Notes under the pieces: generated by a model | Seen by the model: only the letters and a program-made list of their open reading frames with translations | The model's database searches: none | Told to the model about the DNA's origin: nothing | Program-made: the position numbers and the translations under genes | Part shown: positions 1 to 26,425 of the stretch, in pieces | Position numbering within the stretch: position 1 is the first letter of the stretch | How the letters are laid out: each line of letters begins with the position of its first letter | Assembly: GCA_001179505.1 (NCBI GenBank) | Contig: CDMY01000728.1 | Span: 1-26,487 of the forward strand | From: Vitrella brassicaformis CCMP3155 | Taxonomy: Eukaryota > Protista > Chromerida | Direction: 5' to 3' | Length of the DNA stretch: 26,487 nt

Positions 1-1
1 C

Positions 2-5891: not shown

Positions 5892-5924
<33 letters not shown>

Positions 5925-6447
5925 GTGTTGGTTGCTGACCTCAGTTGTGTGGAGCATGCCAAGCTTGCCCTCGAGATCGGTGAGGAGCATGTTGAGGATG
6001 TGTCGGAGTTGCGCCAGGCAGCCGGCGACAAGGTCGCACAGACCGCCATGGCCTACGAGGAGTTCATGCAGGTCACACAGCCACACACCACACACCACAT
6101 GCCACATCACGTCACACACACATGTGTCTGTGACCTGCAGATGTTTGGTTCGATGCGTGTGGGCGGACCGGAGGGCGAGGAGGGCGACGACAGTGAGGAG
6201 GCTACCACGCTCAGCGACGAGCTGCGGGCAGGTCTGCAGGAGTCGAGCTTCAGCCTGTTTGACGCCGCAAGCGAGTGTGCCGTCCACCACCCTCTCAAGG
6301 CTGCGTCCCTCCACGCCATGGCACTGGCACTCAAGGCCGGCGGCACACACACCGCTGACGCAATCTTCGCACCTGACGTGAGATGGAGGGATGAGTGGAT
6401 GGATGGAGAAGGAGGTCAACGACCGACCCCAATTGTGCGTCTGTCCG

Positions 6448-6478
<31 letters not shown>

Positions 6479-8311
6479 AGGGCCCTGGGGAGAGTCTGCT
6501 GCTGAGCATTAAGCTGGCCCTCACGCCTCTGAGCGAGCTGACGGACGACGATGGCGAAGACGGCGGCCAAGGCGATGGTGAGGCCAACGGCGAGGAGGCG
6601 GAGCATGACGCAGCCGAGGGTGAGGAGGACGAAGACGGCGATGGTGACGAGCAGATGGACGTAGACAAGGGGCGCAAGAGAGACAGAGACCTCGACCAGG
6701 GGGAGGAGGAGGGCGACGAGGGTCCCCAAGCCAAGCGACAGCGGTGAGGACAAACTCAACACAGACAGAGCACACACACACGCACACTCTCTCTCTCTCT
6801 CTCTCGCTCGCGCGCGCGCACACACACTTCTTTGTGGCCTCACTCACTTTGTGCCCATTGGCTCGGTCGGTTCGTGTGTGCGCAGTGTGTGCGGCGGTTT
6901 CTTCTTTGATGATTCTTTCCCGGACGACCTTGGCCTGCCGCAGATGTTCGAGGAGGGGGAGGGGGAGGAGCCCACGGATCCCACAGATGTACACCAGCAG
7001 CCCGAGACCGACCTCCAAGCACCACTAGCCGCCGCACACGCACTCGGTGGGTGAGGTGACTGGCTGATCCATCCATCAAGACACACACACACGCACACAC
7101 ACGCACGCACACACACGCACGCACACACTCCCCCCTCCCCCCCCCCGTGTGTGTGCGTGTGTAGGGGCGTTGGCTGATGTGGCCCCTGTGCAGTTGCGGG
7201 ATGCGCAGCTGAACTACCCGGACACCTTCGACGAGCACTATGTCAACACCATCTTAGACAAGGTATGGGTGGCTGTGTGTACCTAATCTATCCACGTGTA
7301 CTGTGTTGTGCTGTGTTGCGTGATGGTGTAGTTGGACAATTGGGTTGAGATCCTGCGTGACGGCAATAAGCACCAGGGGGACGACGTCAACGAGGTAATG
7401 GAATAAGCGGTGGAGGGGATGTGGTGGCTGGCCGCTGTGTGGTAAGATGTCGTGTGTTGTGTTGTGTTGTGTTGTGTGTCGTGTGTGTCCTCAGTTGGTC
7501 TACACGGTGCTCACCACCCAGTTCGTCCTTACAGAACAGTTCTGGCAAGACAAGTACGCACAGACGCAGCCCTACTCACACACACACACACACACAGACA
7601 GACACACAGGACGGCATCCCTCTCCGTGTTTGCAGAGCGGTGTTTGCCGATGTGGGCAAGGTGCAGGAGCGCTTCTCCTTCTGGCTGACCTACATCATGC
7701 CAACGCTGCTCGACCGCCTCGACTTTGTCCCCCTGCCCGACGACCTCCACCACATGGACATCGACACACCGCCACACACCCATGCCCGCCACCACCGCCC
7801 ACACCACAACGCCATGCGGCCCAGCGAGATGCGGGCCCGCTGCGAGTACGCCGCCCGGCAGGCGCATGAGGTGTGGCTGCGGCTGCTGGGCGACTACCTG
7901 GCCGACTCGACCATTTCGGAGGACGAGCCGGAGGAGCCGGTGGGCTTCTTCAACCTCTACAAATACGCCAACAAGATGCAGGTGGGCCGCAAAAGACGAA
8001 AGAAACGGGTGGCAAAAGGTCAACGTTTGTTAATGTGTCTGTGGGTGGGTGCGTGTGTGTGGCTGCAGCTACTAGGGTATTTGGGTAGTCTGATTGAGCG
8101 TTTTTTGGTGTTGGTGGTCGAGGAGGACGGCCGGCGGGCGGCCGTCAAGCGGCTCAAGGCCATCCAGGAACAGGTACGTGTCTGTGGGCAGGGAGCAGCC
8201 ACTCGTTCGATGGATGTGGGGTGGTGTGATGTGATGTGATGTGATGTGTTGTGGTGTGTTGGTGTGCAGGTGCACCTGCATCCTGGGGAGGCGCCCAGCA
8301 CACCCACATGA
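2..8311 (+). CDS. Large multi-exon hypothetical protein (5'-partial), mostly alpha-helical with acidic low-complexity tracts; function unknown
   Basis: Frame-consistent GT-AG exon chain. Examples: 2-115 (SAVAAAARQWCEERRADPLEWLKELLTYLSINRDLKSK), 227-284, exon from 609 (GVEAVHCALRIGRQ), 3408-3668 (MQQAESRNLLAACVKEAE), exon from 7636 (AVFADVGKVQERFSFWLTYIMPTLLDRLDF), final exon 8270-8311 (VHLHPGEAPSTPT*). Roughly 35-40 exons and about 1,500 aa by approximate hand count. No family motif recognised. Confidence 0.75.
5179..5232 (+). repeat. Pure-pyrimidine octamer tandem repeat (CTCTCTCC)n in an intron
   Basis: ctctctccctctctccctctctccc… runs about 54 nt with only C and T, followed by a (GT)n tract. 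Confidence 0.85.
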
Positions 8312-8928
8312 GAGACAGAGGGGCAGATACACCGACGTCCTACCCACCCATGTGTAGCTTTAGTGTCGGTTGGGTCGGCTGGTCGGTCGGTCGGTCGGTC
8401 GATGTGAAGTAGATGTGAAGTAGACAGAACTGGGGTGGTGTGTGTGTGTGTGTGCGGGGGGCGGGAGCGGCATAGATAAACCGACCAAGCATCATTCATT
8501 CATCGAATGAGTGAGTGAATTCCGGCATGGTATGGCATGGCATTGTCCACTCATCGTCCATGCATCCATCCATCCAGATCCATCCATCCACCCACGGTCT
8601 CATTGTCTTGACAAACATCAGTCAATCAATCAGCCAGCCAGTGTACAGGCACCACCTGACGTGCAGCGTCGATTGCCTCTGTCTGTTGGAGGCATATGCA
8701 CACGCACACACACCAAGGGAATCATTCTGGTGCGTGCGACATGGTGACACCCCTCCCCTCCCTCCCTCCCCATCCTCCCTGCCTGTACAGAAACTAAGCG
8801 ACCACGCACCTTGGGCAGACAGACAGACAGACAGCGAGCAATTTCCCTCACCCACCACCGCCGCCGCCGTGCCGTTTATACAGTAAACACAGCCGTACGC
8901 CTTGCCGACGGTTTCTTTCCCTCCTGAC

Positions 8929-12380: not shown

Positions 12381-14818
12381 CCATGTCAGCGAATGGGCGG
12401 CAAGACGTTTTCGTGGAAGGGCAAGAGGGATAACCAGCAGGGCGGTGCTGTGACTTCTGTTGGGACCACCACCAAAGCACAGCAATCCACACCGGTACGC
12501 ACAGACAAACATGCAGCTCATGGCGATGGCATTTTTGCTGTTTGACTTGGCTCCATCCAGGTGGTGTCTGTTGGTGCTGGGAGGCGTTTGCCGCGTGAGG
12601 GCCTCATTCTCATCTGCGGCTATGGCGTGTGGCCGCTCTTCGACAACAGCATCGCCAAGGAGGCCGGGGCTCAGTGCCGCCAGGTGGACATCGACTGCTC
12701 CCGGGCCGCCGACAGGGCCTTCTGGCAGACGATGCCCGCCAATGTGGCCATGAGGTGGGGCGGCCGCATGCCGAAGATCGCCCGCATCTGGTGCTGTCAC
12801 CCGGCTGGCGAGGGGGCCTGGTGTCTGGACGTCATCTCGGCGCTCATCGAGGGCCACACAGAGGGCCGCACAGCCATGGTGGCGGAGAAGAGAACAGAGG
12901 CAGAGAGGCGGGGAGAGGCGGCCGACATCCCCGACGGCTCACTTACGACGATCGCCTTCGAGGCGGCTGAGCTGAGCGACGAGGTCATGCAGTCCGTCAG
13001 GCGCACCAACCCCGGCCTCCCCTCTGTGTCTGCCCCGCTCCCCTCCCTCCCCGCCCTCACATCCATCAGCGGCCTCACCCGCCGCCACCGTGGCATCGGC
13101 AACCGCGGCTGGCGCGCCCCGTCGCTGGAGCGGGTGCAGGCGCACGAGCACGTCGACACACTGGGGCCNNNNNNNNNNNNNNNNNNNNNNNNNNNNNNNN
13201 NNNNNNNNNNNNNNNNNNNNNNNNNNNNNNNNNNNNNNNNNNNNNNNNNNNNNNNNNNNNNNNNNNNNNNNNNNNNNNNNNNNNNNNNNNNNNNNNNNNN
13301 NNNNNNNNNNNNNNNNNNNNNNNNNNNNNNNNNNNNNNNNNNNNNNNNNNNNNNNNNNNNNNNNNNNNNNNNNNNNNNNNNNNNNNNNNNNNNNNNNNNN
13401 NNNNNNNNNNNNNNNNNNNNNNNNNNNNNNNNNNNNNNNNNNNNNNNNNNNNNNNNNNNNNNNNNNNNCTGAGGGTGTTCGACGTGCCCTCGACGGTCGA
13501 CCAGAAGGCCGAGGTGCTGCAGGAGGTGCCTGTTGCTGCAGAGGAGGGACAGCCGGGGCCGCTGGCGAACTTGGAGGATGTCGGGCCGATTGAGATCCCC
13601 GCCAATCTGACGACGAATCAGCAGGCGTTGACAATATGGTGCACTCGGTTGCAGGTCAGCAGGCAGACAGACAGACAACGGACAACGGCTGCAATGATAC
13701 TTGCTGTGTCTATGTCATTTCCTTGTTTAGATGTTGGGGTCGGGTCTCGTGTCACGAGGCTGTCGTCGGTCAATCAAGTCGCTGAAGGTCAAGTTCGTCA
13801 ACCGGGCGGTTGTGAGCCCAAGGCTTTTCGACTTCGCCGAGGCCCTGCAGACATTCGCCAGTGCGGTGTGCATCGAGGATGCCCCCATCAGCTTCAAAGG
13901 TGTCGTAGGGTGGTTCCTCCTGAAGACTCTGTACCGCCCCCTCTTCCCCGCTGCCCCGTCCCCCGTCCTCGAGACCCTCATGCACCAGCTGGCAAACCAG
14001 GCGACAGAGGTGGGAGTGGACCTCAGGTGGTACACCCTCGCCGCCCCGGCCACGCCTGCGATGCTGGACATGGCCAGAGGTCTCGCATTCAACAAGGCCA
14101 CGCGTGTGGTTGTGTTGGGTGTCGACCAGCCTGCACAGGCCGCCCCCGCCCCCGCCCACCCTGCCCTCGCCATCATCCACCAGATCCAGCCGATGCCGCA
14201 GGTGTCGTCCCTGTTTCTCGACAAGCACACGGCATTAGCGGCCGGCATCCAGCTCGCCAGCAAGATGCCCAACTTGCGGGAGCTGTCCATCCAGGGCGGT
14301 GTGCCGATGGAAGAGGCGCTGCAGGCCATCAAGGCCATCGGGTGTGAGCGGGAGCTCGACGAGGTGGACCTGAGTGACATTCAGGGGGTGGGCAGCGGGG
14401 GCATCGACATAGGGGAGCATATTAGAGAGGGATTCCCACAGATCACCAAACTGGTTGTCGATCTTAGAGGTGGGTGGATTGGAGGGTAGACTGCCCCACG
14501 GAGAGGGAAAGAAAGTAACACCCAGAGAGACCTGTATCTGAATCTGCGTCTGTGCCTGTCTGTGCGTCTGTGTGTCCAATCCCACCAGTTCCTGGTGGCG
14601 TCACCGACTTTGTCGAGTTCGCCTGTTCGAGTGTGAGATCGCTGCTGCAGCTCAAGTGCAAGACGGTGGACCTCCTGCTGCGGGGCCTGGATGCCGACAC
14701 ACGCAGCCGGCTCGAGTCTGCCGTGCCTGCACAGCTTGGCAGCATCGTGGGCACGATGATATGGTGCTCGCAGAAGGGGGAGAAGCTCAGGATCACTGCC
14801 GAGCATGACAGTGGGTAG
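11474..14818 (+). CDS. Hypothetical protein: heptad-like N-terminus, small beta-rich module, F-box-like motif, degenerate LRR-like C-terminus; interrupted by assembly gap
   Basis: ATG at 11474 (MDIDNADGPAAAAAA). Short exons SLRDVTDQLDS / MTSQMAACTEAAK / DRGRLADALKTF / TLRAPRYKVGTRVSV (ends 12289), then long exons 12561-gap, gap-13655 and 13730-14469, and last exon 14589-14818 (VPGGVTDF...AEHDSG*). Phases are consistent across the checked junctions. Confidence 0.7.
13169..13468. other. Assembly gap (300 N) inside a coding region
   Basis: Run of N from 13169 to 13468, with coding-like sequence on both sides (…HEHVDTLG before; LRVFDVPSTVDQK after). Confidence 0.99.
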
Positions 14819-15044: not shown

Positions 15045-17036
15045 TCATTTGGCTCGCACGAAGCCGATCATGAGCTTGGAGCGGTCGAACACGGTGTAAA
15101 AAGCACGCAGGAACACCTGCACACAACACACACTTCCTGTCCCTGTCCCTCTCTCTCTCTGGCTGTCTGACCTGTCCGAGTGTCCACCCTCTGATGTCAT
15201 CCGTCTCGCCGGCGTCGTCCGTCGCTATGCCTGCATGGGCACACAGATACAGTGATTTGTCGTACTTGTCTGTGTGTGTGTGTGTGTGTGTGGGCTGTAG
15301 CTGACCGAGCATGCATTCTGACTGTCCGTCCTCCCGCCGAAACTCCAAGACGTAATCGTCCGGCGTCAACACAAGCTGCAGCCACACACACCCCCACACA
15401 TGAGGCGCACATCCCCCTGTCTGTCTGTCTGTCTGTCTGTCTAGGTCTGTGTGACCTCCAGGACGTTGCCTTCGAGCCCCTGTATCTGCAGCATGAGGGA
15501 CGGCAGCCGGCCGCGGTCGGCACACGACGACACACGCAGGTCAGACAGATCGGTCGACTTGGGGGCGTAGATGAGATAAGTGCCAGTGTCTGAACAGACA
15601 CGAATGACACGTGTGTGTGTGTCTCCACTCAATGCTTATGTGTCACCGACCGACGATCGACGTCTTCTCGCCGTCCATGCTGATGTCGAGGAGCGGCGCT
15701 GTGGCTGACGGGCTGTCTTGCGGCTGTGCCTTGCGAACGCCGAGGACAGTGACGGCCCAGTAGGACGATGAGGGGTCGACAGGCGCCCACACAAACTCCT
15801 CGGCTGGCGTCCGCTTCAGTGACAGGTCCGCACCGCCAAACAAGATCTGGCCGCCGTCGTGAGACAGATGGTACGAGAACTGATTGGCCAAGCTACACGT
15901 ACACACACACACAGAGGTGAGAGAAAGACATCTCATCCGTGTGCCTGTCTGTCTGTCTGTCTGCTGTGTGTGGGTGTGGGTGAGACTTGAGCTTAGTGAG
16001 GATTTCGTTCTTCATGATCGTGTCCCTGACACACATACACACAGAGACATGGCAGCCACGTCTCCCTTTCTGCCTCTCTAGTTGCATCGATCTAGGTGTG
16101 CATCGTACATGAGTGGTGTGACGCCTCTCTGTTTGATCTCCGCGTTTGCAAAGCCCAAACCGACAATGCCGTCCCACTCGATGGTCTCGAGCAGCGGCAC
16201 GTCGACCGTCGACGCGAACCCCACACTCTGATTGGGAACCTCGATGCCATCACCGACCACAACCTGCACACCACCACACAGAGAACATGCAGCCGCCCCT
16301 CTCTCTCTGTCTCTCTCTGTGTTGGTTATATTTTACTCACCGTCTCGGTTGCGTCTCGTCCGGCGACTTTGCCGCTGAGGTACTCGACGCTGAGTCGCGA
16401 GGGCTGGCCGTCTGACGTCCGCCGCGGGCGGTACGTAACACTCCGCCGGTAGAGGGTGTGTCTCGCACAGGCGGGACTCGCACAGCTCTGGTCGGGCACC
16501 CACAACTCGCACTACGCACACGGATGGACACAGAGACGTGAGATGGGATTGTCGTTGTGTGTCGGTGGTCGTCTGACCGACCGATGCTGTGTCGAACAAG
16601 ACTTTAAAATGTGTCGTGGGGCTCTTGCTGCATCCATCCATCCATCCACAGAGACACAGCCATGCATCCACCTCGAGTGCGCGTGTGATTTATTGGCTGA
16701 CTTACCCGATGCCGATTGTGCCGAAGTAAGTCGCCAGACGCTGCACACAAAGACACAAAAACACAAACCATTCTGTCATTCCGTCACTGCTTAGTTTCTG
16801 TATGCGCCTACCTTTGATGCGAGGACTTGTGTGTGCAGGGGGAGTCTGTCGCCGCCTCGAAGACTCAGCTGCAGAAAGGACGGGGCAGACAGAGTGGCGT
16901 TGTGTCTCATGCGCACATGGTCCCTCTCTGTCTGCCGGTCGATGCGCGTCAGCGGCACTCTGATCAGGCCGTCAGCAGACACACATGCACTGCAACAGAG
17001 GGCGAGAGCCAAGGCCAGCAGCAGCAGACGAACCAT
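15045..17036 (-). CDS. Secreted pepsin-like aspartic protease (peptidase family A1) with signal peptide and propeptide
   Basis: 11 exons: 17036-16812, 16740-16706, 16627-16582, 16511-16341, 16263-16109, 16025-15987, 15892-15651, 15589-15456, 15375-15306, 15230-15172, 15116-15045. Signal peptide MVRLLLLALALALCCSACVSA. Motifs: YFGTIGIG, FKVLFDTASCELWVP, flap EYLSGKV, WDGIVGLGF, SIVDTGTYLIYAP, GWTLGQVFLRAFYTVFD, IGFVRAK*. Confidence 0.93.
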
Positions 17037-17653: not shown

Positions 17654-20600
17654 TCAGAACGAGAAGACGTCCTGGACCATGCCAACCGAGTCGATGTTAA
17701 GGCCGGCGAATCCGACGAGGCCTCGTGTGAGTTCGTGTGTATCGCTGATGGCATGCAATTGAACCGTCAGCTCGTGTAGCGATTGTGCACCCTGCATGGA
17801 TAGACATGGACAAAGACACAAACATTCATAAGCAGTGATGGCCAGTATGTCGATCAGATCAGCTGCCCGACTGACCGAGAAGGTGAAATCAAACCAGTGG
17901 GGCATCATCCAAACGACCCAGTCGAAGGACCCCACCCGCAGCACGGCCATCAGCAGGAAAGACAGCAGGCAGAAGAAAATTATCGGCTGCAACAACATTC
18001 AAAAGCGCAGTCGGCCCAGTATCGGCTGCAGTATCTCCAAGGCTGAAACAGACCTACCTGGAGGATAAAACTGTTTAGAAACTCAACCGAACACACCATC
18101 ACAAAGTCCTGATAGATCACGTAGGTCGGCTGGCCCTCGAGGCCGCTCTCCGCCAGCTGCGACGAGAAGGCGAAGAGGAGCAGGAAGGAGCAGCACGCGA
18201 ACCAGTAGAGGAGCCCGATGGTGATGCCGATCCGTTCCTTCAGCCGCCACCGCGACAACACAGCTATCTTTCTGTCCTGTTGTCCCGACACACACACAGG
18301 TGCAACATTGCAGGAGATCCATCAATACATGGACAAATGATAGGCCTTTCACACCGACCAATGAGAAATGACCTGACCGACAACATATGACAAGAGGCAC
18401 GTTTTCAGTTGGATGGATGTCTCTTTGTATGTAGTTACCAGAATGGCGTCCTGTGAGGTCGGCGATGCGTCGAGGGGTCATCACAGTGAGGCGTCGCGTG
18501 TGTATTGACGACAGTTTCTGCGCGGTCATCTTCCTCTGTGCTCGCAGATTACGGGGCGTGGCCCCGTATTGTATTTCTGCACACGAGCACCACCCCCAAC
18601 AAGCCATGACTACCTCTCCCCTCTCTCTCTCTCTCTCTCTCTCTCAACCTCTTACCCTGTCTTGTAGCTGACGGCATGATGTGAGGGACGGCTTTGCGGA
18701 AGAGGAAGAGCAGCGTCAGCGGAATGGGTTTGGAAAGCAGGATTGACCATAGGAGCACGGCGATCTGTCGGAGTGTGAGGAGCCACCCGATGCCCCCCGA
18801 CTGCCAGGCCATCAGCACTGTGCTGTCGTCCTGCCGACGGCTGTATCGGCCCTGGTCGAAGAAGACCGCGCACATCGTCAAGATGCCTAGACTGATACTC
18901 CCAAAAAAGAGGGTCCGTTGCACGGCGGTGAACCTGACTCATCAGACAAATGTGGCCACTCCTGTCGTGTGTCTCCCTCAGTGTCTGTCGTCCTCAGTAC
19001 GTGGGGTTCAATATGAAGAGCTGTGACGAGCCACACACAACCAGCCACACAGTGAGTGCCTACGCGCTGCCTCTCACGTGTCTGTGTGCTGCGTTTGAGG
19101 TGTGTGCCTTTCACCTTGAGAAGGGGGTGGTCTCGACGGCAAACCTCGCGGAACATCTTTGGAGCGCCCCATTCCACATACTCGACACGACGCAGTGTTC
19201 GGGTCACCATCAGCTCCACCTCCGCATTCACATCAATCCACAGCTCTGTTACGCTCTTGCGACGATCCGCCAGTTGTGTCGACCCTCTTTTGAGCTGGGG
19301 TCTGTCGTCTGGGGATGATGAGATCGCGATCATGACCGACTTGGTCGACTCGCGGCGCAGCTCTGGTCGGCTGCTCTCTGTGTCTCCTTGCTCCACAGCG
19401 TCGACCCCTTCACTCCAGCCGGGGGCCACAGTGGCGGGCAGCGGTGCCTCCGCGCCAGCCGCGTCGGCGCTAATCTCACCAGGCTGGCTGCTGCGAGAAA
19501 CAGGGCTTGAGTCGAAGAATGAGCCAATGACATTCACCTTCTCGTCGCGTCCTAAACTGATGGGCGAGGTGATCTCAGTGTCCGTTGCAGTGCCATCGGC
19601 TGAAGTGTCTTGCGGCTGGCCGGCGATGTTGTCCAGGGAAGTGACAGTCTGCGGGCGGCCTACGATTGTGGGATTGAGGAGCGATTCCGCTGCGGCCTGC
19701 TGCTGTTGCTGCTGCTGCTGCCTTTTGCGCTCCAGGACGGCACTGAAAGAGCGTTGAATGAGTACGGCGGCGGCCTGCTGCCTCTGCAGCTCCAACAACA
19801 GCCGCTTTCGGAGCGCTTCCTTCAGCACGCCACTCCTGCGACGACAATGCAGACAGTCCGAGGCACAAACACGTCAGTCATTTAGTCAGAGTCAGCAGTT
19901 TAGGGCCCCCAGCATACTTGATAAGAGAGACGTCTTTGGCGTCTTTGTCATGGCTCCCCCACGATATGAGCTTGACCCATGCCGACTCGAGCCTCCGGGT
20001 GTCCTTTCTCGTCTTGTCTCTCTGCAGCAACCGCTGTATCGCCCGGAGATCCTTGGCATCGACCGCAGCGCTCGTCGACTCGGCAATCGACATGTCGGAC
20101 TGCACGTGATCCTCTTCGTCAGAAGCGAACTCCATCGACGCATGTGGCGAGCCGATGCGCTTGACTCTCTTGCGGGGGGAGGACTCGCCACTCTGCAGGG
20201 CGGATGGGCTGAATGGTGCCGGTATGTCCACCCCCCGGCCCTCTCCTCCCAGAGCGACATGCTGTTCTTCAGAGGTCGTCCAGTTTGGGGGGAATGTGGG
20301 GACGTCCTCTGCGAGATGTGTCTCGAACAAGGCGCTCTCCTGTGAGAGTAGGTGCTTGATCTGTCGCTTGGAGTGGAAGTGCTTGATGAAGTCGGACAAG
20401 GAGGGAGGCTCCTCCGCCACTTTGCACCTCAGCTTCTGGTGGTCGACGTTTTTCTCTGCCCACTCGACGGACAACCGCTTGTTCATCCTGCACCCGCCCA
20501 CACATCCATCTCTCCAGGAGGGTTCACACAAGTAGGAGAAGCTTGTACCATTCCTCCATTGTGGGCTTGGTTGTTTCAGCCCTCACAACGGTTGAAAACT

Positions 20601-23600
20601 TGGAGGGAGGCTTGCCCGGCGATGGCTCGTCGTGTAAGCTTATGATGCTCTTGCCACTGCTTGGGGCTGTGTGGACATCCGTCAGGGGTTTGCCTTCGCT
20701 CAGCAGGTCGTTGCGCACCGCTCTGCAGCAGAGAAGGAATGAATGGCAGCGGTTATTTGTTCATCAGGGGAATTCACTTACCTGAGTGTGCGCAGTTCCT
20801 GGAGATGCAGTGTGGGCTCTCGCTTGCGGCAGTGCAGGTAGATGCCGCCGAAGATGCGGCATATGAGGAAGTCGCACCACCAGGGGTGGTAGCACCGACG
20901 GCCGACACAACCATTGATACTCCGCTGCAAACTCGACCGCTGCGCATGAAGAGCAAGGACGAAGGAAATGGGTGTCTATCTGCGGTCGTTGATTGTATGT
21001 GTGTGTGCTTACGGCTTTGTGTCGTGTGCTGTCGCGACAACCGGCACACAGCAGACAACAGAACAGGAGTGAGACCATTGGTGGACATACACAGTGTTCG
21101 AATGACCCACTCACTCGAGCAGTGGATCGGTCATCCTGATGAAACATCCAATCAAACGGGTGGATAATGAATTCACAACACAATGATGCGTGTGCGCTGT
21201 GTCGTGACTGACCATATATCAAGCAAGATCTCATCAGTGATACTGCCAAGAACGACGATCAAGACCAGCACACAACACATAATGATTGTGTGTCTCTTGT
21301 CTGTTGTGCTTACGGGTGTTTGCAGTCGAAGTAGACCGAGAGGATTAAGCAAGTGGTGTGTATGGCGATCATAATCGACACGAAGAAGGCAGCTATGTTT
21401 TGTGTCCACGCGGTGATGTCGGCCATCCTGGCGAGGGAGTCACCCGCACCGCCCACCACCCCAGCTATATGGCTGTCAACGATCACACTCCTGCAGACAC
21501 GGAAGCACTCACACACGCATCATGACCTAGGTGTGTGTGCCAGCGGTGTCAGCTGACCTGAAGAGTGAAGAGAATTCTGTGAGGTGAGTGCACTCACAGC
21601 AGAGGGTCGTCTCATTCGACAGCGCCAAATTCACATGACAACCTACACATACACACCCGTTAATTCATTGATCGACCGATGGATTGATCCGAGAGACACG
21701 TGTGTGCATGGCTGACCTTGTGTGTCCCACTGGTGCGTCGATGCGTTCCAGAAGCCACACACCACATGTACATCGTACGCCCTCTCCGTTCCATTGACAG
21801 AGGCATTGCCAGCCGCCGGCACGCTGTCAGCTGAGGGGCGAGGGATGAACAGCCGGAAGGGCCTTTGCTGCCCGTCACCCGCCGTCAGCTGCAGGTCGCT
21901 GCCGCATTGTCGGGCCGACACAGCCAAAGTGCCCTGCGCTGCATTTCTAAGAGTGTCGTTGGCGGTCAGGTTGGCCATTGGCACCTCCTCCTGAGCGGCA
22001 TAAGCGTATGGGTCGTCGGCCCAGAAGGTCATCTGCACACTCTCGCGCAGCCCGCCGCCATCGGCGCACACGGCTGGTGGGATGGATGGCAATGAAGGCA
22101 TGTCCACGGCCACACTGGTTTCCTTCATCGTGAGTGTGGCCCCACTGGCCGTGTCTGTGCGGGCAACTCTCAGCCGCGTCTTGGCGCCCACCACTTCGGC
22201 CGTGCCATTTGGATGTGCGGCTGCACGTGTGGCGAGGCTGTCTGCCAGCTGGGCTGTGGTGCCGATGATATCAGATGACAACGTGTGATAGGTCCCGTTG
22301 GCAGCCGGTGTCAGCCGCCGAAGGTGTCCGTCGGCCTTTGCTGTCCTGTTGAGTTGTCTGAGGAGGCCGGCCGCCCCATCGAGATAGTACTGAAGGCCCT
22401 GCAGCTCCTTGACGGCATCCGCGAGAGTGTCGTCCGGCTGGGAGATGGTGTCCGCCGAGACGGCCGCGAGAGCCTTGAACGTCGCGACGCCCGCCTCCGC
22501 CGTGTCCATGTCGTCGTTCTCTGCACACACAAGACAGCACGGCAATCAGGTGATCTTGTGTGTCTATCTTTGTTCTGCTGCATGCCTGTCTCATCGGCCA
22601 CCTCGACGGTCGTCGCCAGCGTGACGGCTGACAAGAGCACTTCAGCCGGGCTGCTCGACACATCACTCAACTTTGTCGACCGATCGATAGCAGCCTGACC
22701 AGGTACACAAAGGACAGAGGAATTGGGTGCCCTGTCGTTGCTTGTGTGTGTCGACATGTACCTTTTGCAGGTTGCGCATAAGTGCCTTGACGACTGCGTT
22801 TCTTTGCGCCTTGGTCTCTTCCTGTGTGGAATTGGGCTTTGCCAGCCCGGCCATGTCCTCTTTGCGGGCCACTTTGGCGACGTTAATAGTCTTGAGTAGC
22901 CGAGAGCTGAAGTCCTCGGGCGAATCCACGGGCGGCGGTGTGGGTGGTTCCTCGCCCTCGCCCCCCACCAGGCTGCCGATCGTGTCCTCTGCATCCGAGA
23001 TGTCAACTGCATCGGGGTTCTGCAGCAAGTAAAAGAGACATGCGCACACACGAGACATACATGCACCGATGCAAGTGTCTCGTCTCTCGGTGGGGCCAGT
23101 CACTTTGAGATTGTCTAGGTCGTCTGTGATATCGTCCACGTCCACCGGCGGGACGAGCACCGGGGGCGCACCAGCTAAAGACAAACACGGAGGGAGGCAG
23201 CAACAGCCAGCCGATCGACGTTCATTGTGCCTCTCGCGTATCTTTCTCACTCACTTGTGGGCGCCATTGGCGGTTCTGTCGTTGGAATGCCTGGCTGGGG
23301 GACTGTTGTCGGTGGTGCAGTGGTCACAGGGCCTGTGGTCGGTGCAGCCGTGGTTGCTGGCGGAGGTTGGGCGGTTGTCGACGGTGGCAATGTGGTGGGA
23401 GGTGGAGGTGGCGGGGCTGTGGTCACGGGTGGAGGGGGAGCAGTCGTCGGTGGTGCTGTCGTTATGAGGACTGAGGGAGGCGAGCAAGGGGACACGAGAC
23501 AGAGAGAGGGAGAGGCAGAGAGAGCTGACGAAAAGGCAAGCCTTGTGCTTACAGCATGGCGAGCCTGGCGTAGGGCATGTGTATCCTGCTTCAATCTGGC

Positions 23601-26425
23601 ACGTATCTGAGCATCCGTCTCCCGCCGCCGTGTTCCCGTCATCGCACTGAGAACGTACACAGCCAGCCAGTCATCATCGGTGCTTGTGAGACCGTCTCAC
23701 GCTCGTGCACGTACAAAGAAAGACATTACCTCCTCCCCGCCAACCAAGAGGCCGTCACCACATACTGGTACGCAACTCGCGCTGGGTGTTGGGCATGTAT
23801 AGCCTGATTCAATCTGGCACGTGTCTGAGCACCCGTCGCCCGCTGCAGTGTTCCCGTCATCGCACTGAGAACGTTCACATGCACACACTTCCGAGACTCG
23901 CCCATCTGTGCGTGGGCACAATACGCGTACCTGTTCTGAGCCCTTCAGTTGACCATCCCCACATATGGCTGCCGCGCAAAGACGCAAAAGACAACAACAG
24001 TTTTTGCTGTGGTACGTGTGGCGTGGCGTGGTGTGATGCATACTTACGATCGCACGGAAACCCAGGGGTCGAACATACCCACCCCACCTCCAGCAAACAG
24101 TTGTCGTCGCATCCGTCGCCTACAGACACGAGCAGCGGAATGGATGTTCTTCCTCGTGTGCTGTTTATTGTCGTTACCGACGGCCGTATTCCCATCATCA
24201 CACTGAGACACCAATGTACACAGCCAGTCAGCCACATCGATACTTGCGAGACTCGCTATCCATCGCTTATGTAAATACATAGGTACAGACACAGACCTGT
24301 TCCCCGCCAATCACGAGGCCGTCGCCACATAACGGTTCGCAAATCTCTCCGGGTGTGGGGCATGTATAGCCTGATTCCGTCTGGCATGTAGCCGAACAAC
24401 CGTCGCCCCCCATGTCGTTGCCATCTGGGTGGAAGCAACAAAAGGAGACGGAGGGCATATGGCGTCATGACAGCTGCTGACTGCAGTGCAGTACAATAAG
24501 TACCATCACAGGTTTCGCTTCCAGTCACAATGTAATCGCCGCACTTCGCTTCAGGCTCAATATCTAGAAGAGGACAGTTACACCGTACTGCCTTCAGAGA
24601 TGCGCTGCGGATCTGCGCTTCTGTGTTTACCGAGGCAGTTGGCTGCACATGCACAATCCCGGATCCCAGCTGTAGCATGGATACCACACCATTGCACGCA
24701 AGACAGAAGGCAAAAAACGGAATAGAACAGAACATGTCCAGTCTCCCCTTTCATCCTACTGACAGTCGTAGTTCCCGTCGGGGAACTGGTTCCATCCGTC
24801 CGGCGCCGGGTCTGCTCCCCATTTGAGGAAGCAGGAACCGGCATTGTGGAAAGAGAACCCACGGCACTCGGGCGTATTCCGGCACGCCGCCGCACATTCG
24901 TTGTAAGTGAAGCCGGGAGCTCCGTGCCAATTAAAGAGGTTGCCGCTGAAGAGAACCTCCCCATTATACTGCTTAAAGGTGTCGCAACCTTCAAAGATAT
25001 GCCACGAGACAGGACAAGCAATGCGAGACTCGTGTGTTTGTGTTTCTATGTGATTGACCTGGTTGAACGATAAACTCTATTGTCGCGGGAGTATTGCTCA
25101 CAAGGTTGCCCGAGAAATCCGCCACATTGTGTGAAGGATCGAGTCCAATCACGACTTTGGCAGTGGTGAATCCGGGAGGCAACTCATCCAGACGGATCTG
25201 AGTGACAAATGGAGATAAGACACATCCCCCACCCCCGCATACACACATATGCTGTCGTGCCCACCTCGACGCCCCATTTGTCACTCCATAGCGGCCATGT
25301 GACATTCTCCTGGTGCAAAGGCGCGAGGTGGACCCAGCCCAGGCCCCCGTCAAAAGTGCAGTTGGTGCAATGGATGTCCAGATCAGAGGGGTCAATGTGC
25401 TTCACTGGCTCGGTGAAGTGAATCTCTGTTGGGCCAAAACGGAGGAACATGCGTGTGGATTTTCTGTTCCGTTCTCTGGTGATTGCGTACCAGCGAATAG
25501 ATGGATGTAGTTGGGGTGGTTGTAGAAGTTGGGGACGCTCCCACCGGGTAAGGGTAAAGCGCTCGTGTCGCCGCGGCGCACTATCATCATCTCAGGTGCT
25601 TTCACATCTTAAAAAAACACGGAAAGAAGACAGACAGACAGACAGACAGAGCAGTAGGATATGATGTCTGGAATCACTTTACCAGCATTCACGGAGCAGG
25701 CCCTCGCGGAGCTGACTTGAGCGGGGTTTACTGAGCCACTGAGCTCGGCTTGATCATAGAGGCGACAGGGAGCTGGGACCGACCCGCCGCCAGGTTGGCC
25801 ATTCCGGGCGTCGAAGGTGAAGGATTCGCAACTGGGGTTCTCAAGACACAGTCGGCTACAGTGCCACCAAGACTCGGCATTGGTGTCCTCGATTGTTGAA
25901 TGCGTCAAACCCTCCCCCCAGAGCATTCCGCAGCCTGACGAAGCGCACACACACAGATTCGCGCATCGACTTTATCGACTCAGGCACACACCGTGGTACA
26001 CGATGAGTGTATTCGACGGGTTGTTGTGGTCCAAATTTCCGTAGTTACGTGAGAACACATTCCCCGGCACCTGGATCGTCACGCGTCCCTTCTGTATGGG
26101 CCATATCCACTCGACAATCTCTCTGTTGGTTGGCTGTGAAACAAATACGATAACTCCGTTGACGCCGCCGAGTGTCTGCCAGCTCGTCAGGTTGGTGAAG
26201 TTGTTGAAGGCCAGACCAGAAATGTCCTCTGAAAACCGGATGGTGACCTCGAAATAGTTGGCTTCAGCGTCCGCGGGGAAGACAGATGGCATCAGCACTT
26301 GCACCGATGGAGGCTCCACTGCACAAATAAACACGAGACTTGCAATAATCTCTTTGCTTTGCCTGTGGTCGAGTGTGGTTGGTTGGCCATGGTCACGCAC
26401 CGCAGCCGGCCTCGTGCTTCTCACA
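17654..26425 (-). CDS. Giant GAIN/GPS-containing polycystin-1-like (5-TM) surface receptor with Ig-like, PAN/apple and Myxococcus Cys-rich repeat ectodomain (5'-partial)
   Basis: Continuous frame-consistent exon chain from mini-exon 26425-26401 (CEKHEAGC) to the stop at 17654. GPS: VVCGFWNASTHQWDTQGCHVNLALSNETTLCCECTHLTEFSSLF. Polycystin-type TM motifs: DHPLLKLFILNPTFTAVQRTLFF…MCAVFF, TLRQIAVLLWSILLSKPIPLTLLFLFRKAVP, EFLNSFILQPIIFF. Confidence 0.85.
21558..21765 (-). other. GPS autoproteolysis motif (C-terminal part of a GAIN domain), split by intron 21643-21716
   Basis: C-x-FW…W…GC…C-x-C-x-H-L-T-x-F. The His, Leu and Thr codons lie at 21586-21578. Confidence 0.9.
23255..23470 (-). repeat. 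Pro/Thr-rich mucin-like stalk (TTAPP repeats)
   Basis: TTAPPTTAPPPPVTTAPPPPPPTTLPPSTTAQPPPATTAAPTTGPVTTAPPTTVPQP. Confidence 0.85.
23553..24545 (-). repeat. Four Myxococcus-type cysteine-rich repeats (CGDG…E-x-CDDGN…GDGC…C)
   Basis: CGDYIVTGSETCDDGNDMGGDGCSATC; CGDGLVIGGEQCDDGNTAVGDGCDDNC; CGDGQLKGSEQCDDGNTAAGDGCSDTC; CGDGLLVGGEECDDGNTAAGDGCSDTC. Confidence 0.9.
24764..24988 (-). other. PAN/apple domain 2 (not visible in the ORF track)
   Basis: Exon translates to CDTFKQYNGEVLFSGNL…TYNECAAACRNTPECRGFSFHNAGSCFLKWG…YD, spliced to SGIRDC. Confidence 0.85.
25059..25607 (-). other. Bacterial-type Ig-like domain 2 (three exons)
   Basis: DVKAPEMMIV…EIHFTEPVKHIDPSDLDI…IRLDELP…AKVVIGLDPSHNVADFSGN…TPATIEF: D-x2-P…F-x-E-P-V…D-x2-G-N pattern. 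Confidence 0.55.
25683..25934 (-). other. PAN/apple domain 1
   Basis: C…SWWHCSRLCLENPSCESFTF…PCRLYD…SSARAC: the C-x3-C-x5-C-x2-F-x-F…C-x-L pattern of PAN domains. Confidence 0.8.
25992..26318 (-). other. Bacterial-type Ig-like domain 1 of the receptor
   Basis: Exon reads EPPSVQVLMP…FEVTIRFSEDISGL…GRVTIQVPGNVFSRNYGN…NPSNTLIVYH. It resembles the P-x-V…V-T-x-x-F-S-E…V-x-I-x-V…G-N pattern of bacterial Ig-like repeats. Recognised by eye. Confidence 0.6.

What the first reader, a model, noticed from the sequence alone, without database searches (positions are those of the whole stretch)
17654..26425. Self-cleaving adhesion receptor: Ig-PAN-Ig-PAN-CysRich4-mucin-GAIN/GPS-5TM in a probable alveolate
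Hand splicing joins what the ORF track shows as dozens of fragments into one protein. It combines bacterial-type Ig-like domains, PAN/apple domains (the adhesive fold of apicomplexan microneme proteins such as MIC4 and AMA1), Myxococcus-type Cys-rich repeats, a mucin stalk, a GAIN domain with an intact GPS, and polycystin-1-type TM helices. GAIN plus TM is established for adhesion GPCRs and polycystin-1/REJ proteins, and REJ/GPS proteins occur in protists. I do not recognise this particular ectodomain combination. It suggests a glycan- or contact-sensing, autoproteolytic mechanoreceptor in a free-living relative of parasites. Any analogy to apicomplexan multi-pass sensors of exocytosis (CRMPs) is functional speculation, not claimed homology.
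Basis: partly seen in the sequence, partly recalled or inferred. Interest (0 to 1): 0.85.

Follow-up and report, generated by a model that had tools for sequence, protein, structure and literature searches.

The report
Split-annotated GAIN/GPS five-helix receptor, Vitrella
The region holds one long, 36-exon gene of the alga Vitrella brassicaformis, filed in the public record as two genes, that encodes a surface receptor with sugar- or protein-binding modules, a probable self-cleavage domain and five membrane helices; it belongs to a small uncharacterised family found so far only in this species.

Summary
The window is the whole contig CDMY01000728.1 of Vitrella brassicaformis CCMP3155, a free-living alveolate. 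On the minus strand, 36 exons (26425-17657) with 57-94 nt introns give one open frame of about 2050 aa.

GenBank splits this into two genes 32 bp apart. The first gene's stop codon sits inside a perfect GTGAGT donor. Spliced RNA contigs join the two parts through a 16-nt micro-exon, and five of the six genome-annotated paralogs are annotated as single proteins.

- **Confirmed:** two PAN domains, four DUF4215 (Myxococcus-type) Cys repeats, a Pro/Thr mucin stretch, and a GPS motif with an intact HL|T site that is invariant in all eight family members.
- **Weaker:** a helix-then-strand pattern and top fold hits to latrophilin and REJ GAIN domains; five hydropathy peaks that fit an N-out, C-in topology.
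- **Not confirmed:** the "bacterial Ig-like" label. The polycystin-1-like TM bundle is one structural lead only.
- **Absent:** PLAT, REJ, PKD channel and 7TM domains.
- **Incomplete:** the contig end cuts off the 5' end of the gene.

The family has no detectable sequence relatives outside Vitrella. I read it as a new variant of the GAIN-domain receptor kind. Cleavage and signalling are inferred, not shown.

The parts
26401..26425 (-). 25-nt micro-exon encoding C-E-K-H-E-A-G-C, the end of an upstream domain whose remaining exons lie beyond the contig end
   Evidence: AG acceptor and GTGCGT donor flank it. It aligns with the '..ICEK....C' end of the N-terminal domain of paralogs P0001, P0004, P0005 and P0008.
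   Evidence: 41-46% identical to four paralogs. Strands in the AF2 model have low confidence. No Pfam or meaningful PDB-profile hit. Language-model neighbours are Big_5/Big_12 at 0.74, a lead only.
25606..25932 (-). PAN/apple domain 1, aa 115-198
   Evidence: PAN_1 E 3.2e-06, 27.3 bits against a cut-off of 21.4.
   Evidence: Conserved in paralogs and carries an 'H-F-T-E-P-V' motif. One paralog hits Big_12 at E 0.24 only. hhalign against module 1 is not significant.
24668..24986 (-). PAN/apple domain 2, aa 338-412
   Evidence: PAN_4 E 1.3e-07 and PAN_1 E 1.7e-07. The family profile hits Sarcocystis microneme antigen L2 and Toxoplasma MIC4 structures.
23469..24667 (-). four DUF4215 (Myxococcus-type) cysteine-rich repeats, aa 413-609, nine short exons
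   Evidence: DUF4215 E 4e-42 in 4 stretches. The family profile hits the same repeat in pappalysin structures, E 6e-08.
23146..23468 (-). Pro/Thr-rich mucin-like stalk, aa 610-690
   Evidence: 65% P+T+S. RNA joints lie at both ends of its main exon.
21490..23145 (-). GAIN-like domain, aa 691-1123: helical part (691-930), then beta part with the GPS motif (aa 1081-1122, window 21759-21560); the H-L-T codons are at 21586-21578
   Evidence: Pfam GPS 34.2 bits. The profile hits aGPCR GPS regions in PDB, E 7e-05. Best Foldseek hits are latrophilin-3 and latrophilin-1 GAIN, E 9e-04 and 9e-03, but with low TM-scores from a poor model. Best Atlas shape hit is a REJ/GPS cluster, 323 residues aligned. 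Paralog P0003 is named GAIN-B domain-containing by UniProt.
21328..21580 (-). 39-residue stalk beginning T-E-F-S-S-L-F (the candidate tethered peptide), followed by TM1 (aa 1155-1177)
   Evidence: T1116, F1118 and F1122 are invariant in 8 paralogs. TM1 hydropathy is 2.33.
21013..21242 (-). three tiny exons (30, 21 and 16 nt) that bridge the two annotated genes; the annotated stop (TGA, 21114-21112) lies inside the GTGAGT donor
   Evidence: DNA read directly. Paralog P0001 has the same join. RNA contig record 6 of run X1 runs from 20939 into 21013-21028 and 21115-21120, a 22/22 match to the spliced form and not to the genomic continuation.
18918..21327 (-). first cytoplasmic loop, about 580 aa: a conserved Cys/His-containing juxtamembrane module (aa 1178-1262), a low-complexity stretch, an IQ-like helix (aa 1505-1556, window 19919-19682) and a conserved basic pre-TM2 module
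   Evidence: The 495-aa stretch after the juxtamembrane module has 2 Cys and 1 N-glycosylation sequon, against 47 and 14 in the ectodomain. The helix is invariant across paralogs and is the only part of the P0010 AF2 model above pLDDT 60. Pfam IQ scores 21.6 bits (cut-off 20.3) in paralog P0009; the window's copy is degenerate and gets no hit.
17657..18917 (-). TM2-TM5 with a basic TM3-TM4 loop (18 K+R against 4 D+E), an acidic TM4-TM5 loop and a conserved 62-aa C-terminal tail; the stop codon is at 17656-17654
   Evidence: Hydropathy and charge counts. 56-90% identity to paralogs. ESM Atlas structure neighbours of this part are PLAT/GPS/PKD1L2 clusters at TM 0.50-0.53, against 0.28 or less for all others.

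Best explanation
One gene of Vitrella brassicaformis, wrongly split in the public annotation and cut at its 5' end by the contig end, encodes a type-I-oriented multi-pass surface receptor of a Vitrella-specific family of 8 known members.

Its layout, from outside to inside:
- the end of a possible lectin-like domain (the rest is off the contig)
- beta module, PAN, beta module, PAN
- four DUF4215 Cys repeats
- a Pro/Thr mucin stalk
- a GAIN-like domain with a GPS motif and HL|T site
- a 39-aa stalk and TM1
- a cytoplasmic loop of about 580 aa with an IQ-like helix
- TM2-TM5 and a short cytoplasmic tail.

Most likely mechanism (inferred): the PAN and Cys-rich modules, held away from the membrane by the O-glycosylated stalk, bind glycans or proteins on a surface or on another cell. 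The GAIN domain cleaves itself at HL|T in the secretory pathway, and the two fragments stay together. Pull on, or loss of, the N-terminal fragment exposes the T-E-F-S-S-L-F stalk to the five-helix bundle. The signal then passes to the large first cytoplasmic loop, possibly through a calmodulin- or centrin-type partner on the IQ-like helix.

In design it is closest to the GPS-TM1-loop-TM2-5 half of polycystin-1/REJ proteins, without PLAT and without the channel half, and to the GAIN + 5-TM proteins of Tetrahymena called CRMPs.

Shown here: gene continuity, domain content, motif conservation, expression as spliced RNA. Inferred: topology, cleavage, ligand type, signalling.
For: Gene continuity:
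- The annotated genes are 32 bp apart.
- The annotated stop lies in a GTGAGT donor, and the splice restores the frame exactly as in paralog P0001.
- An RNA contig carries the spliced join.
- 16 of 22 model introns in or touching 18000-23999 are seen as CT..AC joints or spliced loose ends in RNA run X1. DNA runs X2, X3 and X5 are unspliced there.
- Five paralogs are annotated as single 1847-2254 aa proteins, and a transcriptome-derived paralog (P0003) runs from GAIN to the C-terminus.

Domains: Pfam PAN x2, DUF4215 x4 and GPS; PDB profile hits to aGPCR GPS regions, MIC4-type PAN and the pappalysin repeat; GAIN fold leads.

Conservation: the GPS Cys, Trp and HLT residues and the stalk T-x-F are invariant in 8 members.

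Topology: 5 hydropathy peaks; a Cys- and sequon-rich ectodomain against a Cys-poor loop; a basic TM3-TM4 loop.

TM kinship lead: Atlas structural neighbours are PLAT/GPS/PKD1L2 clusters.

Literature: an IQ hit in paralog P0009; GAIN domains in alveolates and GAIN + 5 TM in Tetrahymena CRMPs (PMC3321182, PMC9670195).
Against: - No full-length cDNA. The bridging RNA contig overlaps the upstream exons by only 22 nt.
- RNA depth is zero over most of the large GAIN exon, 22000-22600.
- Both AlphaFold models are poor, mean pLDDT 38. The GAIN fold and the TM bundle are therefore not structurally established, and Foldseek TM-scores to GAIN structures are low.
- Pfam's GAIN model (PF16489) does not hit.
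- The TM half has no match in Pfam or PDB sequences.
- The window's own IQ-like motif lacks the central basic residue and gets no Pfam hit.
- An HL|T consensus does not guarantee cleavage, as the abstract of PMC12488864 notes for aGPCRs.
- A moderately hydrophobic, Cys-rich helix after TM1 could be membrane-embedded, which would change the topology.
Confidence: 0.72

Rival explanations
1. The public annotation is right: there are two genes, a secreted or single-pass PAN/Cys-rich/GPS adhesin (1199 aa) and a separate 868-aa four-helix membrane protein.
For: The GenBank record has two gene calls. There is an in-frame TGA at 21114-21112 if the donor is not used. No single RNA record spans the whole stretch.
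Against: The gap is only 32 bp. The stop lies in a consensus donor. The second gene's first 17 residues are intron read-through. RNA contig record 6 carries the spliced join. Five paralogs are annotated as single proteins, and the transcript-derived P0003 spans both halves. RNA depth at 21000-21199 is as low as expected for exons only.
Confidence: 0.04
2. It is a true polycystin-1/REJ family member, a diverged orthologue that partners with a TRPP-type channel subunit encoded elsewhere.
For: It has a GPS next to TM1, a long first cytoplasmic loop and then four helices. Atlas structural neighbours of TM2-5 are PLAT/GPS/PKD1L2 clusters. The best shape match of the GAIN part is a REJ/GPS cluster. 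Paralogs have a possible C-type-lectin-like N-terminal domain.
Against: No PLAT, REJ, PKD repeat or PKD_channel hit even at E up to 10. The protein ends 62 aa after TM5. No sequence relative of either half was found outside Vitrella. The TM-scores come from a model with mean pLDDT 0.46.
Confidence: 0.12
3. It is a chromerid relative of the ciliate CRMP-type proteins (GAIN + 5 TM) and acts as a contact sensor that triggers regulated exocytosis of extrusive organelles.
For: Tetrahymena CRMP1/2 are reported with Cys-rich modules, a GAIN domain (by HHpred) and five predicted TMs, and are needed for mucocyst exocytosis (PMC9670195). CRMP ectodomains include lectin-type modules, and many diverse CRMPs are reported in Chromera (PMC9815656). 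Language-model neighbours of the TM part include two Ciliophora clusters at 0.91-0.92.
Against: Homology was not tested because CRMP sequences could not be fetched. Apicomplexan CRMPs are defined by a 9-TM core plus two EGF-like domains (PMC9815656), which this protein lacks. The language-model scores lie in a range that shuffled proteins reach 4-10% of the time.
Confidence: 0.1
4. It is a structural surface or cell-wall glycoprotein. The GAIN domain serves only as a shedding device or a stable fold, and the membrane part is an anchor without signalling.
For: Mucin stalk, lectin-type modules, many N-glycosylation sequons. The ectodomain differs strongly between paralogs that share almost the same membrane half.
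Against: The TM2-5 bundle, C-tail, juxtamembrane module and IQ-like helix are the best conserved parts of the family, at 56-90% identity with many invariant polar residues. That is more constraint than an anchor needs.
Confidence: 0.1
5. It is an adhesion GPCR (class B2).
For: A GPS/GAIN next to the membrane, an adhesive ectodomain, and PDB profile hits to aGPCR GPS regions.
Against: There is no 7tm_2 hit. There are five, not seven, hydropathy peaks, with a loop of about 580 aa after TM1.
Confidence: 0.02

Closest known systems
Polycystin-1 / PKD1-like / sea-urchin REJ proteins
   Same: A large modular ectodomain with lectin-type modules, a GAIN/GPS with HL|T directly before TM1, a long first cytoplasmic loop, then a four-helix group. 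Structural neighbours of TM2-5 in the ESM Atlas are PKD1L2-type clusters, and the best shape match of the GAIN part is a REJ/GPS cluster.
   Different: No REJ domain, no PKD repeats, no PLAT in loop 1 (an IQ-like helix and low-complexity sequence instead), no TOP/polycystin domain, and no six-helix channel-like half. There is no detectable sequence similarity outside the GPS motif.
Tetrahymena CRMP1/CRMP2 (TTHERM_00442310, TTHERM_00637180), as described in PMC9670195
   Same: Alveolate proteins reported with cysteine-rich ectodomain modules, a GAIN domain and five predicted TMs.
   Different: Their Cys-rich part is EGF-receptor-like, not DUF4215, and PAN and mucin parts are not reported. Homology to the Vitrella family is untested. 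Apicomplexan CRMPs have a 9-TM core (PMC9815656).
Adhesion GPCRs (latrophilin, BAI, ADGRF1 and others)
   Same: A GPS motif pattern and an HL|T site; a stalk beginning T-x-F-x-x-L-hydrophobic, like the tethered agonist; an adhesive modular ectodomain with a mucin-like spacer.
   Different: No class-B 7TM domain. There are five helices, split 1 + 4 by a cytoplasmic loop of about 580 aa.
Apicomplexan PAN/apple microneme proteins (MIC4, Sarcocystis lectin L2)
   Same: The PAN domains match these structures by profile.
   Different: Those are soluble or single-pass adhesins made of PAN repeats only. Here two PAN domains sit in a GAIN/multi-pass receptor.
Paralogs in the same genome: CEL91843.1 (P0001), CEM02297.1 (P0004), CEM19383.1 (P0005), P0008, P0009, CEL94066.1 (P0002), A0A7S1P750 (P0003)
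   Same: The same GAIN-TM1-loop-TM2-5 chassis; the PAN/DUF4215 ectodomain scheme is shared by the long members P0001, P0004 and P0005, and in part by P0008 and P0009.
   Different: The number of Cys repeats varies (1 in P0001, 4 here). Ectodomain identity to P0001 is only 33-46%, while the region from the mucin onward is 82-92% identical in all but the low-complexity loop (60%), and the DNA there, introns included, is 84-92% identical.

Membership tests
GAIN/GPS autoproteolytic domain proteins | GPS motif with four Cys, two Trp and the H-L-T/S cleavage triad | tested here: met
   Pfam GPS 34.2 bits against a cut-off of 22.5. The pattern is invariant in 8 members. PDB profile hits to aGPCR GPS regions, E 7e-05.
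GAIN/GPS autoproteolytic domain proteins | Full GAIN fold: helical subdomain A followed by beta-sandwich subdomain B that embeds the GPS | tested here: inconclusive
   The AF2 secondary structure shows helices at 693-927 and then strands up to 1112, but pLDDT is 50-80 only in the helical part. Best Foldseek hits are latrophilin GAIN, E 9e-04, with TM-scores of 0.2 or less. An Atlas REJ/GPS cluster aligns over 323 residues. Pfam GAIN PF16489 does not hit.
GAIN/GPS autoproteolytic domain proteins | Actual self-cleavage at HL|T | not testable with these tools
   Needs a western blot of tagged wild type against a T1116 mutant.
Adhesion GPCR (class B2) | Seven-helix secretin-type domain (PF00002) after the GPS | tested here: not met
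   No 7tm_2 hit at E up to 10. There are five hydropathy peaks, arranged 1 + 4.
Polycystin-1 / PKD1-like / REJ | PLAT domain in the first cytoplasmic loop | tested here: not met
   No PLAT hit in P0010 at E up to 10, nor in any paralog.
Polycystin-1 / PKD1-like / REJ | REJ domain upstream of the GPS | tested here: not met
   No REJ (PF02010) hit in P0007 or in paralogs.
Polycystin-1 / PKD1-like / REJ | C-terminal six-helix channel-like half (PKD_channel, polycystin domain) | tested here: not met
   The protein ends 62 aa after TM5 and has no PKD_channel hit.
Polycystin-1 / PKD1-like / REJ | TM1-5 bundle homologous to that of PKD1-like proteins | tested here: inconclusive
   ESM Atlas structure neighbours are PLAT/GPS/PKD1L2 clusters at TM 0.50-0.53 against 0.28 or less for the rest. 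The AF2 model is too poor for a second test.
Apicomplexan CRMPs | Conserved core of two EGF-like domains plus nine TMs (PMC9815656) | tested here: not met
   There are five TMs and no EGF-type Pfam hit.
Ciliate CRMP-like GAIN + 5-TM proteins | Sequence or structure homology of the GAIN-TM region to TtCRMP1/2 | not tested
   The sequences could not be fetched with these tools. The resemblance rests on the description in PMC9670195.
PAN/apple domain | Pfam PAN_1 or PAN_4 above the curated cut-off | tested here: met
   Two domains, 27.3 and 31.4 bits for PAN_1 against a cut-off of 21.4.
DUF4215 / Myxococcus cysteine-rich repeat | Pfam PF13948 above the cut-off, in tandem | tested here: met
   Four stretches, 130-143 bits.
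Bacterial Ig-like domains (Big_5, Big_12) | Significant profile match or a confident beta-sandwich model | tested here: inconclusive
   No Pfam hit in the window's copies. Big_12 reaches E 0.24 in one paralog. No meaningful PDB profile hit. Language-model score 0.74. The AF2 model has pLDDT mostly below 50 there.
IQ calmodulin-binding motif | Pfam IQ above the cut-off | tested here: inconclusive
   Met in paralog P0009 (21.6 bits against 20.3). There is no hit in the window's own copy, where Ser replaces the central Arg.

The most novel reading that the evidence does not exclude
The GAIN-TM1-IQ loop-TM2-5 chassis, carrying swappable lectin, PAN and Cys-rich ectodomains, belongs to an alveolate-wide receptor class. 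That class would be homologous both to the non-channel half (TM1-5) of polycystin-1 and to the ciliate CRMP-type proteins needed for mucocyst discharge. It would act as a self-cleaving contact sensor coupled through a calmodulin- or centrin-type partner to regulated exocytosis. This would link polycystin-type mechanosensing to the origin of the apicomplexan invasion trigger.
Probability: 0.15. Interest if true: 0.8.

Novelty: new variant of a known kind. Interest (0 to 1): 0.5.

Why it matters
GAIN-domain receptors are studied almost only as animal adhesion GPCRs (7 TM) and polycystins (11 TM). This is an expressed, intron-verified example from a free-living relative of apicomplexans. In it the same autoproteolytic module sits on a five-helix membrane part with an IQ-type loop, and it carries the PAN modules that apicomplexans use in microneme adhesins.

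Three things follow.
- It corrects a split gene model in the public record.
- One member shows a conserved membrane chassis behind a divergent ectodomain: the 3' two-thirds of the gene match a second locus at 84-92% DNA identity, introns included, while the ectodomains are only 33-46% identical.
- It gives a tractable candidate for asking whether GAIN + 5-TM receptors, also reported in Tetrahymena, are an ancestral alveolate contact-sensing device.

The function is still entirely inferred, and the domains are already flagged by automatic annotation, so the surprise for a specialist is moderate.

Tried and rejected
- **AlphaFold2 of the two annotated proteins.** P0007 and P0010 were run with 8-sequence paralog alignments and gave mean pLDDT of 38. 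Fold searches on them are therefore weak. The AFDB Swiss-Prot search with the P0010 model returned only long disordered or coiled-coil proteins, and the Atlas shape search with it returned nothing usable.
- **TM-half profile against PDB sequences.** No meaningful hit.
- **phmmer of the 300-aa GAIN exon against 1.84 billion representatives.** Only five Vitrella proteins and one weak repeat hit.
- **Word-indexed searches with the GAIN part and both halves of the membrane part.** Vitrella only, even at E up to 10.
- **Ig-like modules.** No Pfam hits at E up to 10 in the window's copies or in 8 paralog segments, apart from Big_12 at E 0.24 and DUF7271 at E 0.2. PDB profile hits were nil or spurious designed-armadillo matches. 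hhalign of module 1 against module 2 was not significant, so an [Ig-PAN]x2 tandem duplication is not shown.
- **C-type-lectin reading of the paralogs' N-terminal domain.** It rests on a weak top hit only, a snake-venom CTLD at E 0.18, plus my own reading of the motifs.
- **Literature.** No paper in the searchable library pairs Vitrella with 'GAIN domain', 'GPS domain' or CRMPs. The genome paper does not mention GPS, Apple, polycystin, REJ or CRMP, and 'PAN' appears only as 'pan-eukaryotic' in a reference.
- **Adhesion GPCR and apicomplexan CRMP membership.** Both rejected on TM number and missing defining domains.
Full report
**Source and setting.** The window is the complete 26,487-bp contig CDMY01000728.1 of the Vitrella brassicaformis CCMP3155 assembly GCA_001179505.1. 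Vitrella is a free-living photosynthetic alveolate placed in Colpodellida. GC content is about 55-60%. A 300-N gap lies at 13169-13468.

**Gene structure.** Stop-to-stop segments on the minus strand between 26487 and 17654 hold many short coding pieces. The public annotation places two genes here:
- P0007: 1199 aa, window 26443-21111.
- P0010: 868 aa, window 21078-17654.

They are only 32 bp apart. Reading the DNA shows that the stop of P0007 (TGA, 21114-21112) sits inside a perfect GTGAGT donor. Using that donor, then a 16-nt micro-exon (21028-21013, donor GTAAGC), then the acceptor before 20939, keeps the frame open. It gives '...MTDPLLD-TRHKA-RSSLQRSINGC...', the same join as in paralog P0001. 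The first 17 residues of P0010 are intron read-through.

The merged model has 35 exons from 26316 to 17657. Introns are 57-94 nt, all GT-AG except one GC-AG. The model translates exactly to P0007 (from residue 6, without its last residue) plus Asp plus P0010 from residue 18, giving 2050 aa.

A further 25-nt micro-exon at 26425-26401 encodes C-E-K-H-E-A-G-C. It lines up with the end of an N-terminal domain that paralogs carry. The gene is therefore cut at its 5' end by the contig end. Paralogs have about 190 more residues there, and P0001 begins with a signal-peptide-like hydrophobic stretch.

**RNA evidence.** I laid four runs on 18000-23999. X2, X3 and X5 give unspliced contigs and are DNA. 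X1 gives contigs with CT..AC joints, which is GT..AG on the minus strand.
- Eleven joints coincide with model introns.
- Spliced loose ends support five more, making 16 of the 22 introns in or touching the stretch.
- Record 6 of X1 (615 nt, no mismatch) covers 20227-20939 spliced. It then continues for 22 nt that equal the micro-exon 21013-21028 plus the first 6 nt of exon 21115-21135, not the genomic continuation. This bridges the two annotated genes.

There are limits. The overlap on the far side is short. No single record spans the gene. RNA depth is zero at 22000-22600. Exons outside 18000-23999 rest on annotation and homology only. Some X1 contigs come from paralogs and show the same micro-exon splice pattern.

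**Family.** phmmer of the 300-aa GAIN exon against 1.84 billion representatives found five proteins at E of 1e-41 or better, all from Vitrella, plus one weak repeat hit. Word-indexed searches with the GAIN part and with both halves of the membrane part found the same set, even at E up to 10:
- P0001, P0004, P0005, P0008 and P0009, annotated as single proteins of 1847-2254 aa.
- P0002, 1383 aa.
- P0003, a UniProt-only entry (A0A7S1P750, no contig on record) that I take to be transcriptome-derived, running from GAIN to the C-terminus.
- The window's pair, P0007 and P0010.

UniProt names them 'Apple domain-containing', 'GPS domain-containing' or 'GAIN-B domain-containing'. No paper in the searchable library describes them.

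**Domains confirmed in the window's own protein.**
- Two PAN domains: PAN_1 at 27.3 and 31.4 bits, cut-off 21.4.
- Four DUF4215 repeats: 130 bits.
- GPS: 34.2 bits, cut-off 22.5.

The family profile hits PDB sequences of three kinds: the pappalysin repeat, adhesion-GPCR GPS regions (ADGRF1, ADGRL3, latrophilin-1, ADGRG6) and apicomplexan PAN proteins (Sarcocystis L2, Toxoplasma MIC4). The stretch at aa 610-690 is 65% Pro+Thr+Ser. The GPS cysteines, tryptophans, H1114-L1115-T1116 and the following F1118 and F1122 are invariant in all eight members.

**GAIN fold.** The AF2 model of P0007 is poor overall, mean pLDDT 38. It does show about seven helices at 693-927, with block pLDDT mostly 50-80, followed by strands up to the GPS. 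Foldseek against PDB ranks latrophilin-3 and latrophilin-1 HormR-GAIN first (E 9e-04 and 9e-03), with BAI2, BAI3 and GPR110 also listed, but TM-scores are low. The best Atlas shape match is a REJ/GPS cluster over residues 688-1196, with 323 aligned. Language-model neighbours of aa 690-1199 are GPS-bearing clusters. I take the GAIN assignment as likely but not structurally proven.

**Ig-like modules.** The two modules (aa 6-114 and 199-337) are conserved among paralogs and are beta-rich in the poor model. They have no significant Pfam or PDB-profile match. They are not detectably related to each other. Their language-model neighbours are Big_5/Big_12 at 0.74 only. 'Bacterial-type Ig-like' remains a lead.

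**Membrane part.** Hydropathy gives TM1 (aa 1155-1177), 39 residues after the cleavage site, and four more segments at 1758-1777, 1800-1831, 1912-1933 and 1966-1988. Several counts fit an N-out, C-in five-helix topology:
- The ectodomain has 47 Cys and 14 N-glycosylation sequons.
- The 495-aa low-complexity stretch of the TM1-TM2 loop has 2 and 1.
- The TM3-TM4 loop has 18 K+R against 4 D+E.
- The TM4-TM5 loop is acidic.

A Cys/His-rich, moderately hydrophobic helix after TM1 is an open point. The loop holds an invariant helix with an IQ-like motif. Pfam IQ passes its cut-off in paralog P0009. The window's copy, with Ser in place of the central Arg, gets no hit.

No PLAT, REJ, PKD_channel or 7tm_2 domain is found. 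The one pointer to polycystin-1 kinship of TM2-5 is the ESM Atlas structure search. Its three best neighbours are PLAT, PLAT+GPS+lectin (PKD1L2) and PKD_channel (PKD1L2) clusters at TM 0.50-0.53, and all others are 0.28 or less. The underlying model has mean pLDDT 0.46.

**Evolution.** Identity to P0001 is mosaic: 33-46% in the beta and PAN modules, and 82-92% from the mucin onward in all parts but the low-complexity loop, which is 60%. At the DNA level, 23396-20768, 19875-18358 and 18277-17656 align to the P0001 locus (CDMY01000027.1) at 81-89% identity. Exons (87-92%) are barely more alike than introns (84-89%). This is a recent duplication or gene conversion of the chassis, with different ectodomains attached. 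Other first-stage notes on this genome describe further GPS + 5-TM genes with other ectodomains and 'IQ in place of PLAT'. They are unchecked leads, but they agree in kind.

**Comparison with known systems.** GAIN domains in an alveolate (Tetrahymena, more than eight) have been known since the fold was defined (PMC3321182). Tetrahymena CRMP1/2, which are needed for mucocyst exocytosis, are reported with Cys-rich modules, a GAIN domain by HHpred and five predicted TMs (PMC9670195). Apicomplexan CRMPs have a 9-TM core plus EGF-like domains, and 'many diverse CRMPs' are noted in Chromera (PMC9815656).

The Vitrella family fails the defining tests for adhesion GPCRs, for polycystin-1 proper and for apicomplexan CRMPs. 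It shares the design of the GPS-TM1-loop-TM2-5 half of polycystin-1 and of the ciliate proteins. Homology to either could not be tested here.

**Verdict.** It is a lineage-specific variant of the GAIN-domain receptor kind. Self-cleavage, ligand type and signalling are inferred.

Noticed in passing
window 21078-21114, with P0007 and P0010 in GCA_001179505.1: The public annotation splits this gene in two. The annotated 'MYVSL' start of P0007 at 26443 is also an artefact of the contig end.
   Followed up: yes
paralogs P0001:20-195, P0004:20-178, P0005:20-200, P0008:1-137; only the last 8 codons are in the window, at 26425-26401: Paralogs carry an N-terminal domain of about 170 aa with conserved Trp, Gly-Gly-Thr, E-P-W and a final '..ICEK' that reads like a C-type-lectin-like domain. 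The best PDB profile hit is a snake-venom CTLD at E 0.18 only, and there is no Pfam hit.
   Followed up: partly
window 23396-17656 against L002 9326-14944 (CDMY01000027.1): The 3' two-thirds of the gene, introns included, align at 81-89% identity to the P0001 locus, while the 5' ectodomain exons do not align at the DNA level. This points to recent gene conversion or duplication of the membrane chassis with a different ectodomain.
   Followed up: partly
window 21003-21112 and 21311-21500: Contigs of the DNA runs break here and continue in unlike sequence (loose ends, 'TG..TG' joints, a 3-nt insertion at 21500-21502). RNA contigs include a variant micro-exon encoding D-A-R-H-K-A. Paralogous or allelic copies are probably interfering with assembly around the micro-exons.
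   Followed up: no
window about 15045-16910, minus strand (signal-peptide ORF at 16791-17036): The next annotated gene downstream is a 373-aa pepsin-type aspartyl protease (Pfam Asp). The 81-aa minus-strand ORF just upstream of it (16791-17036) begins with a hydrophobic, signal-peptide-like stretch.
   Followed up: no
window 13169-13468: A 300-N assembly gap lies within otherwise GC-rich sequence. The composition dip at 13001-14000 is due to it.
   Followed up: no
introns and intergenic stretches throughout the window, for example 1-8500: Frequent (CA)n/(TG)n-type microsatellites translate as runs of 'HTHT' and 'CVCV' in the ORF lists.
   Followed up: no
ESM Atlas neighbours of the rank-1 GPS cluster: One GPS-domain cluster structurally close to the best feature hit is 55% viral (Nucleocytoviricota), which suggests that giant viruses carry GPS/GAIN-like proteins.
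   Followed up: no
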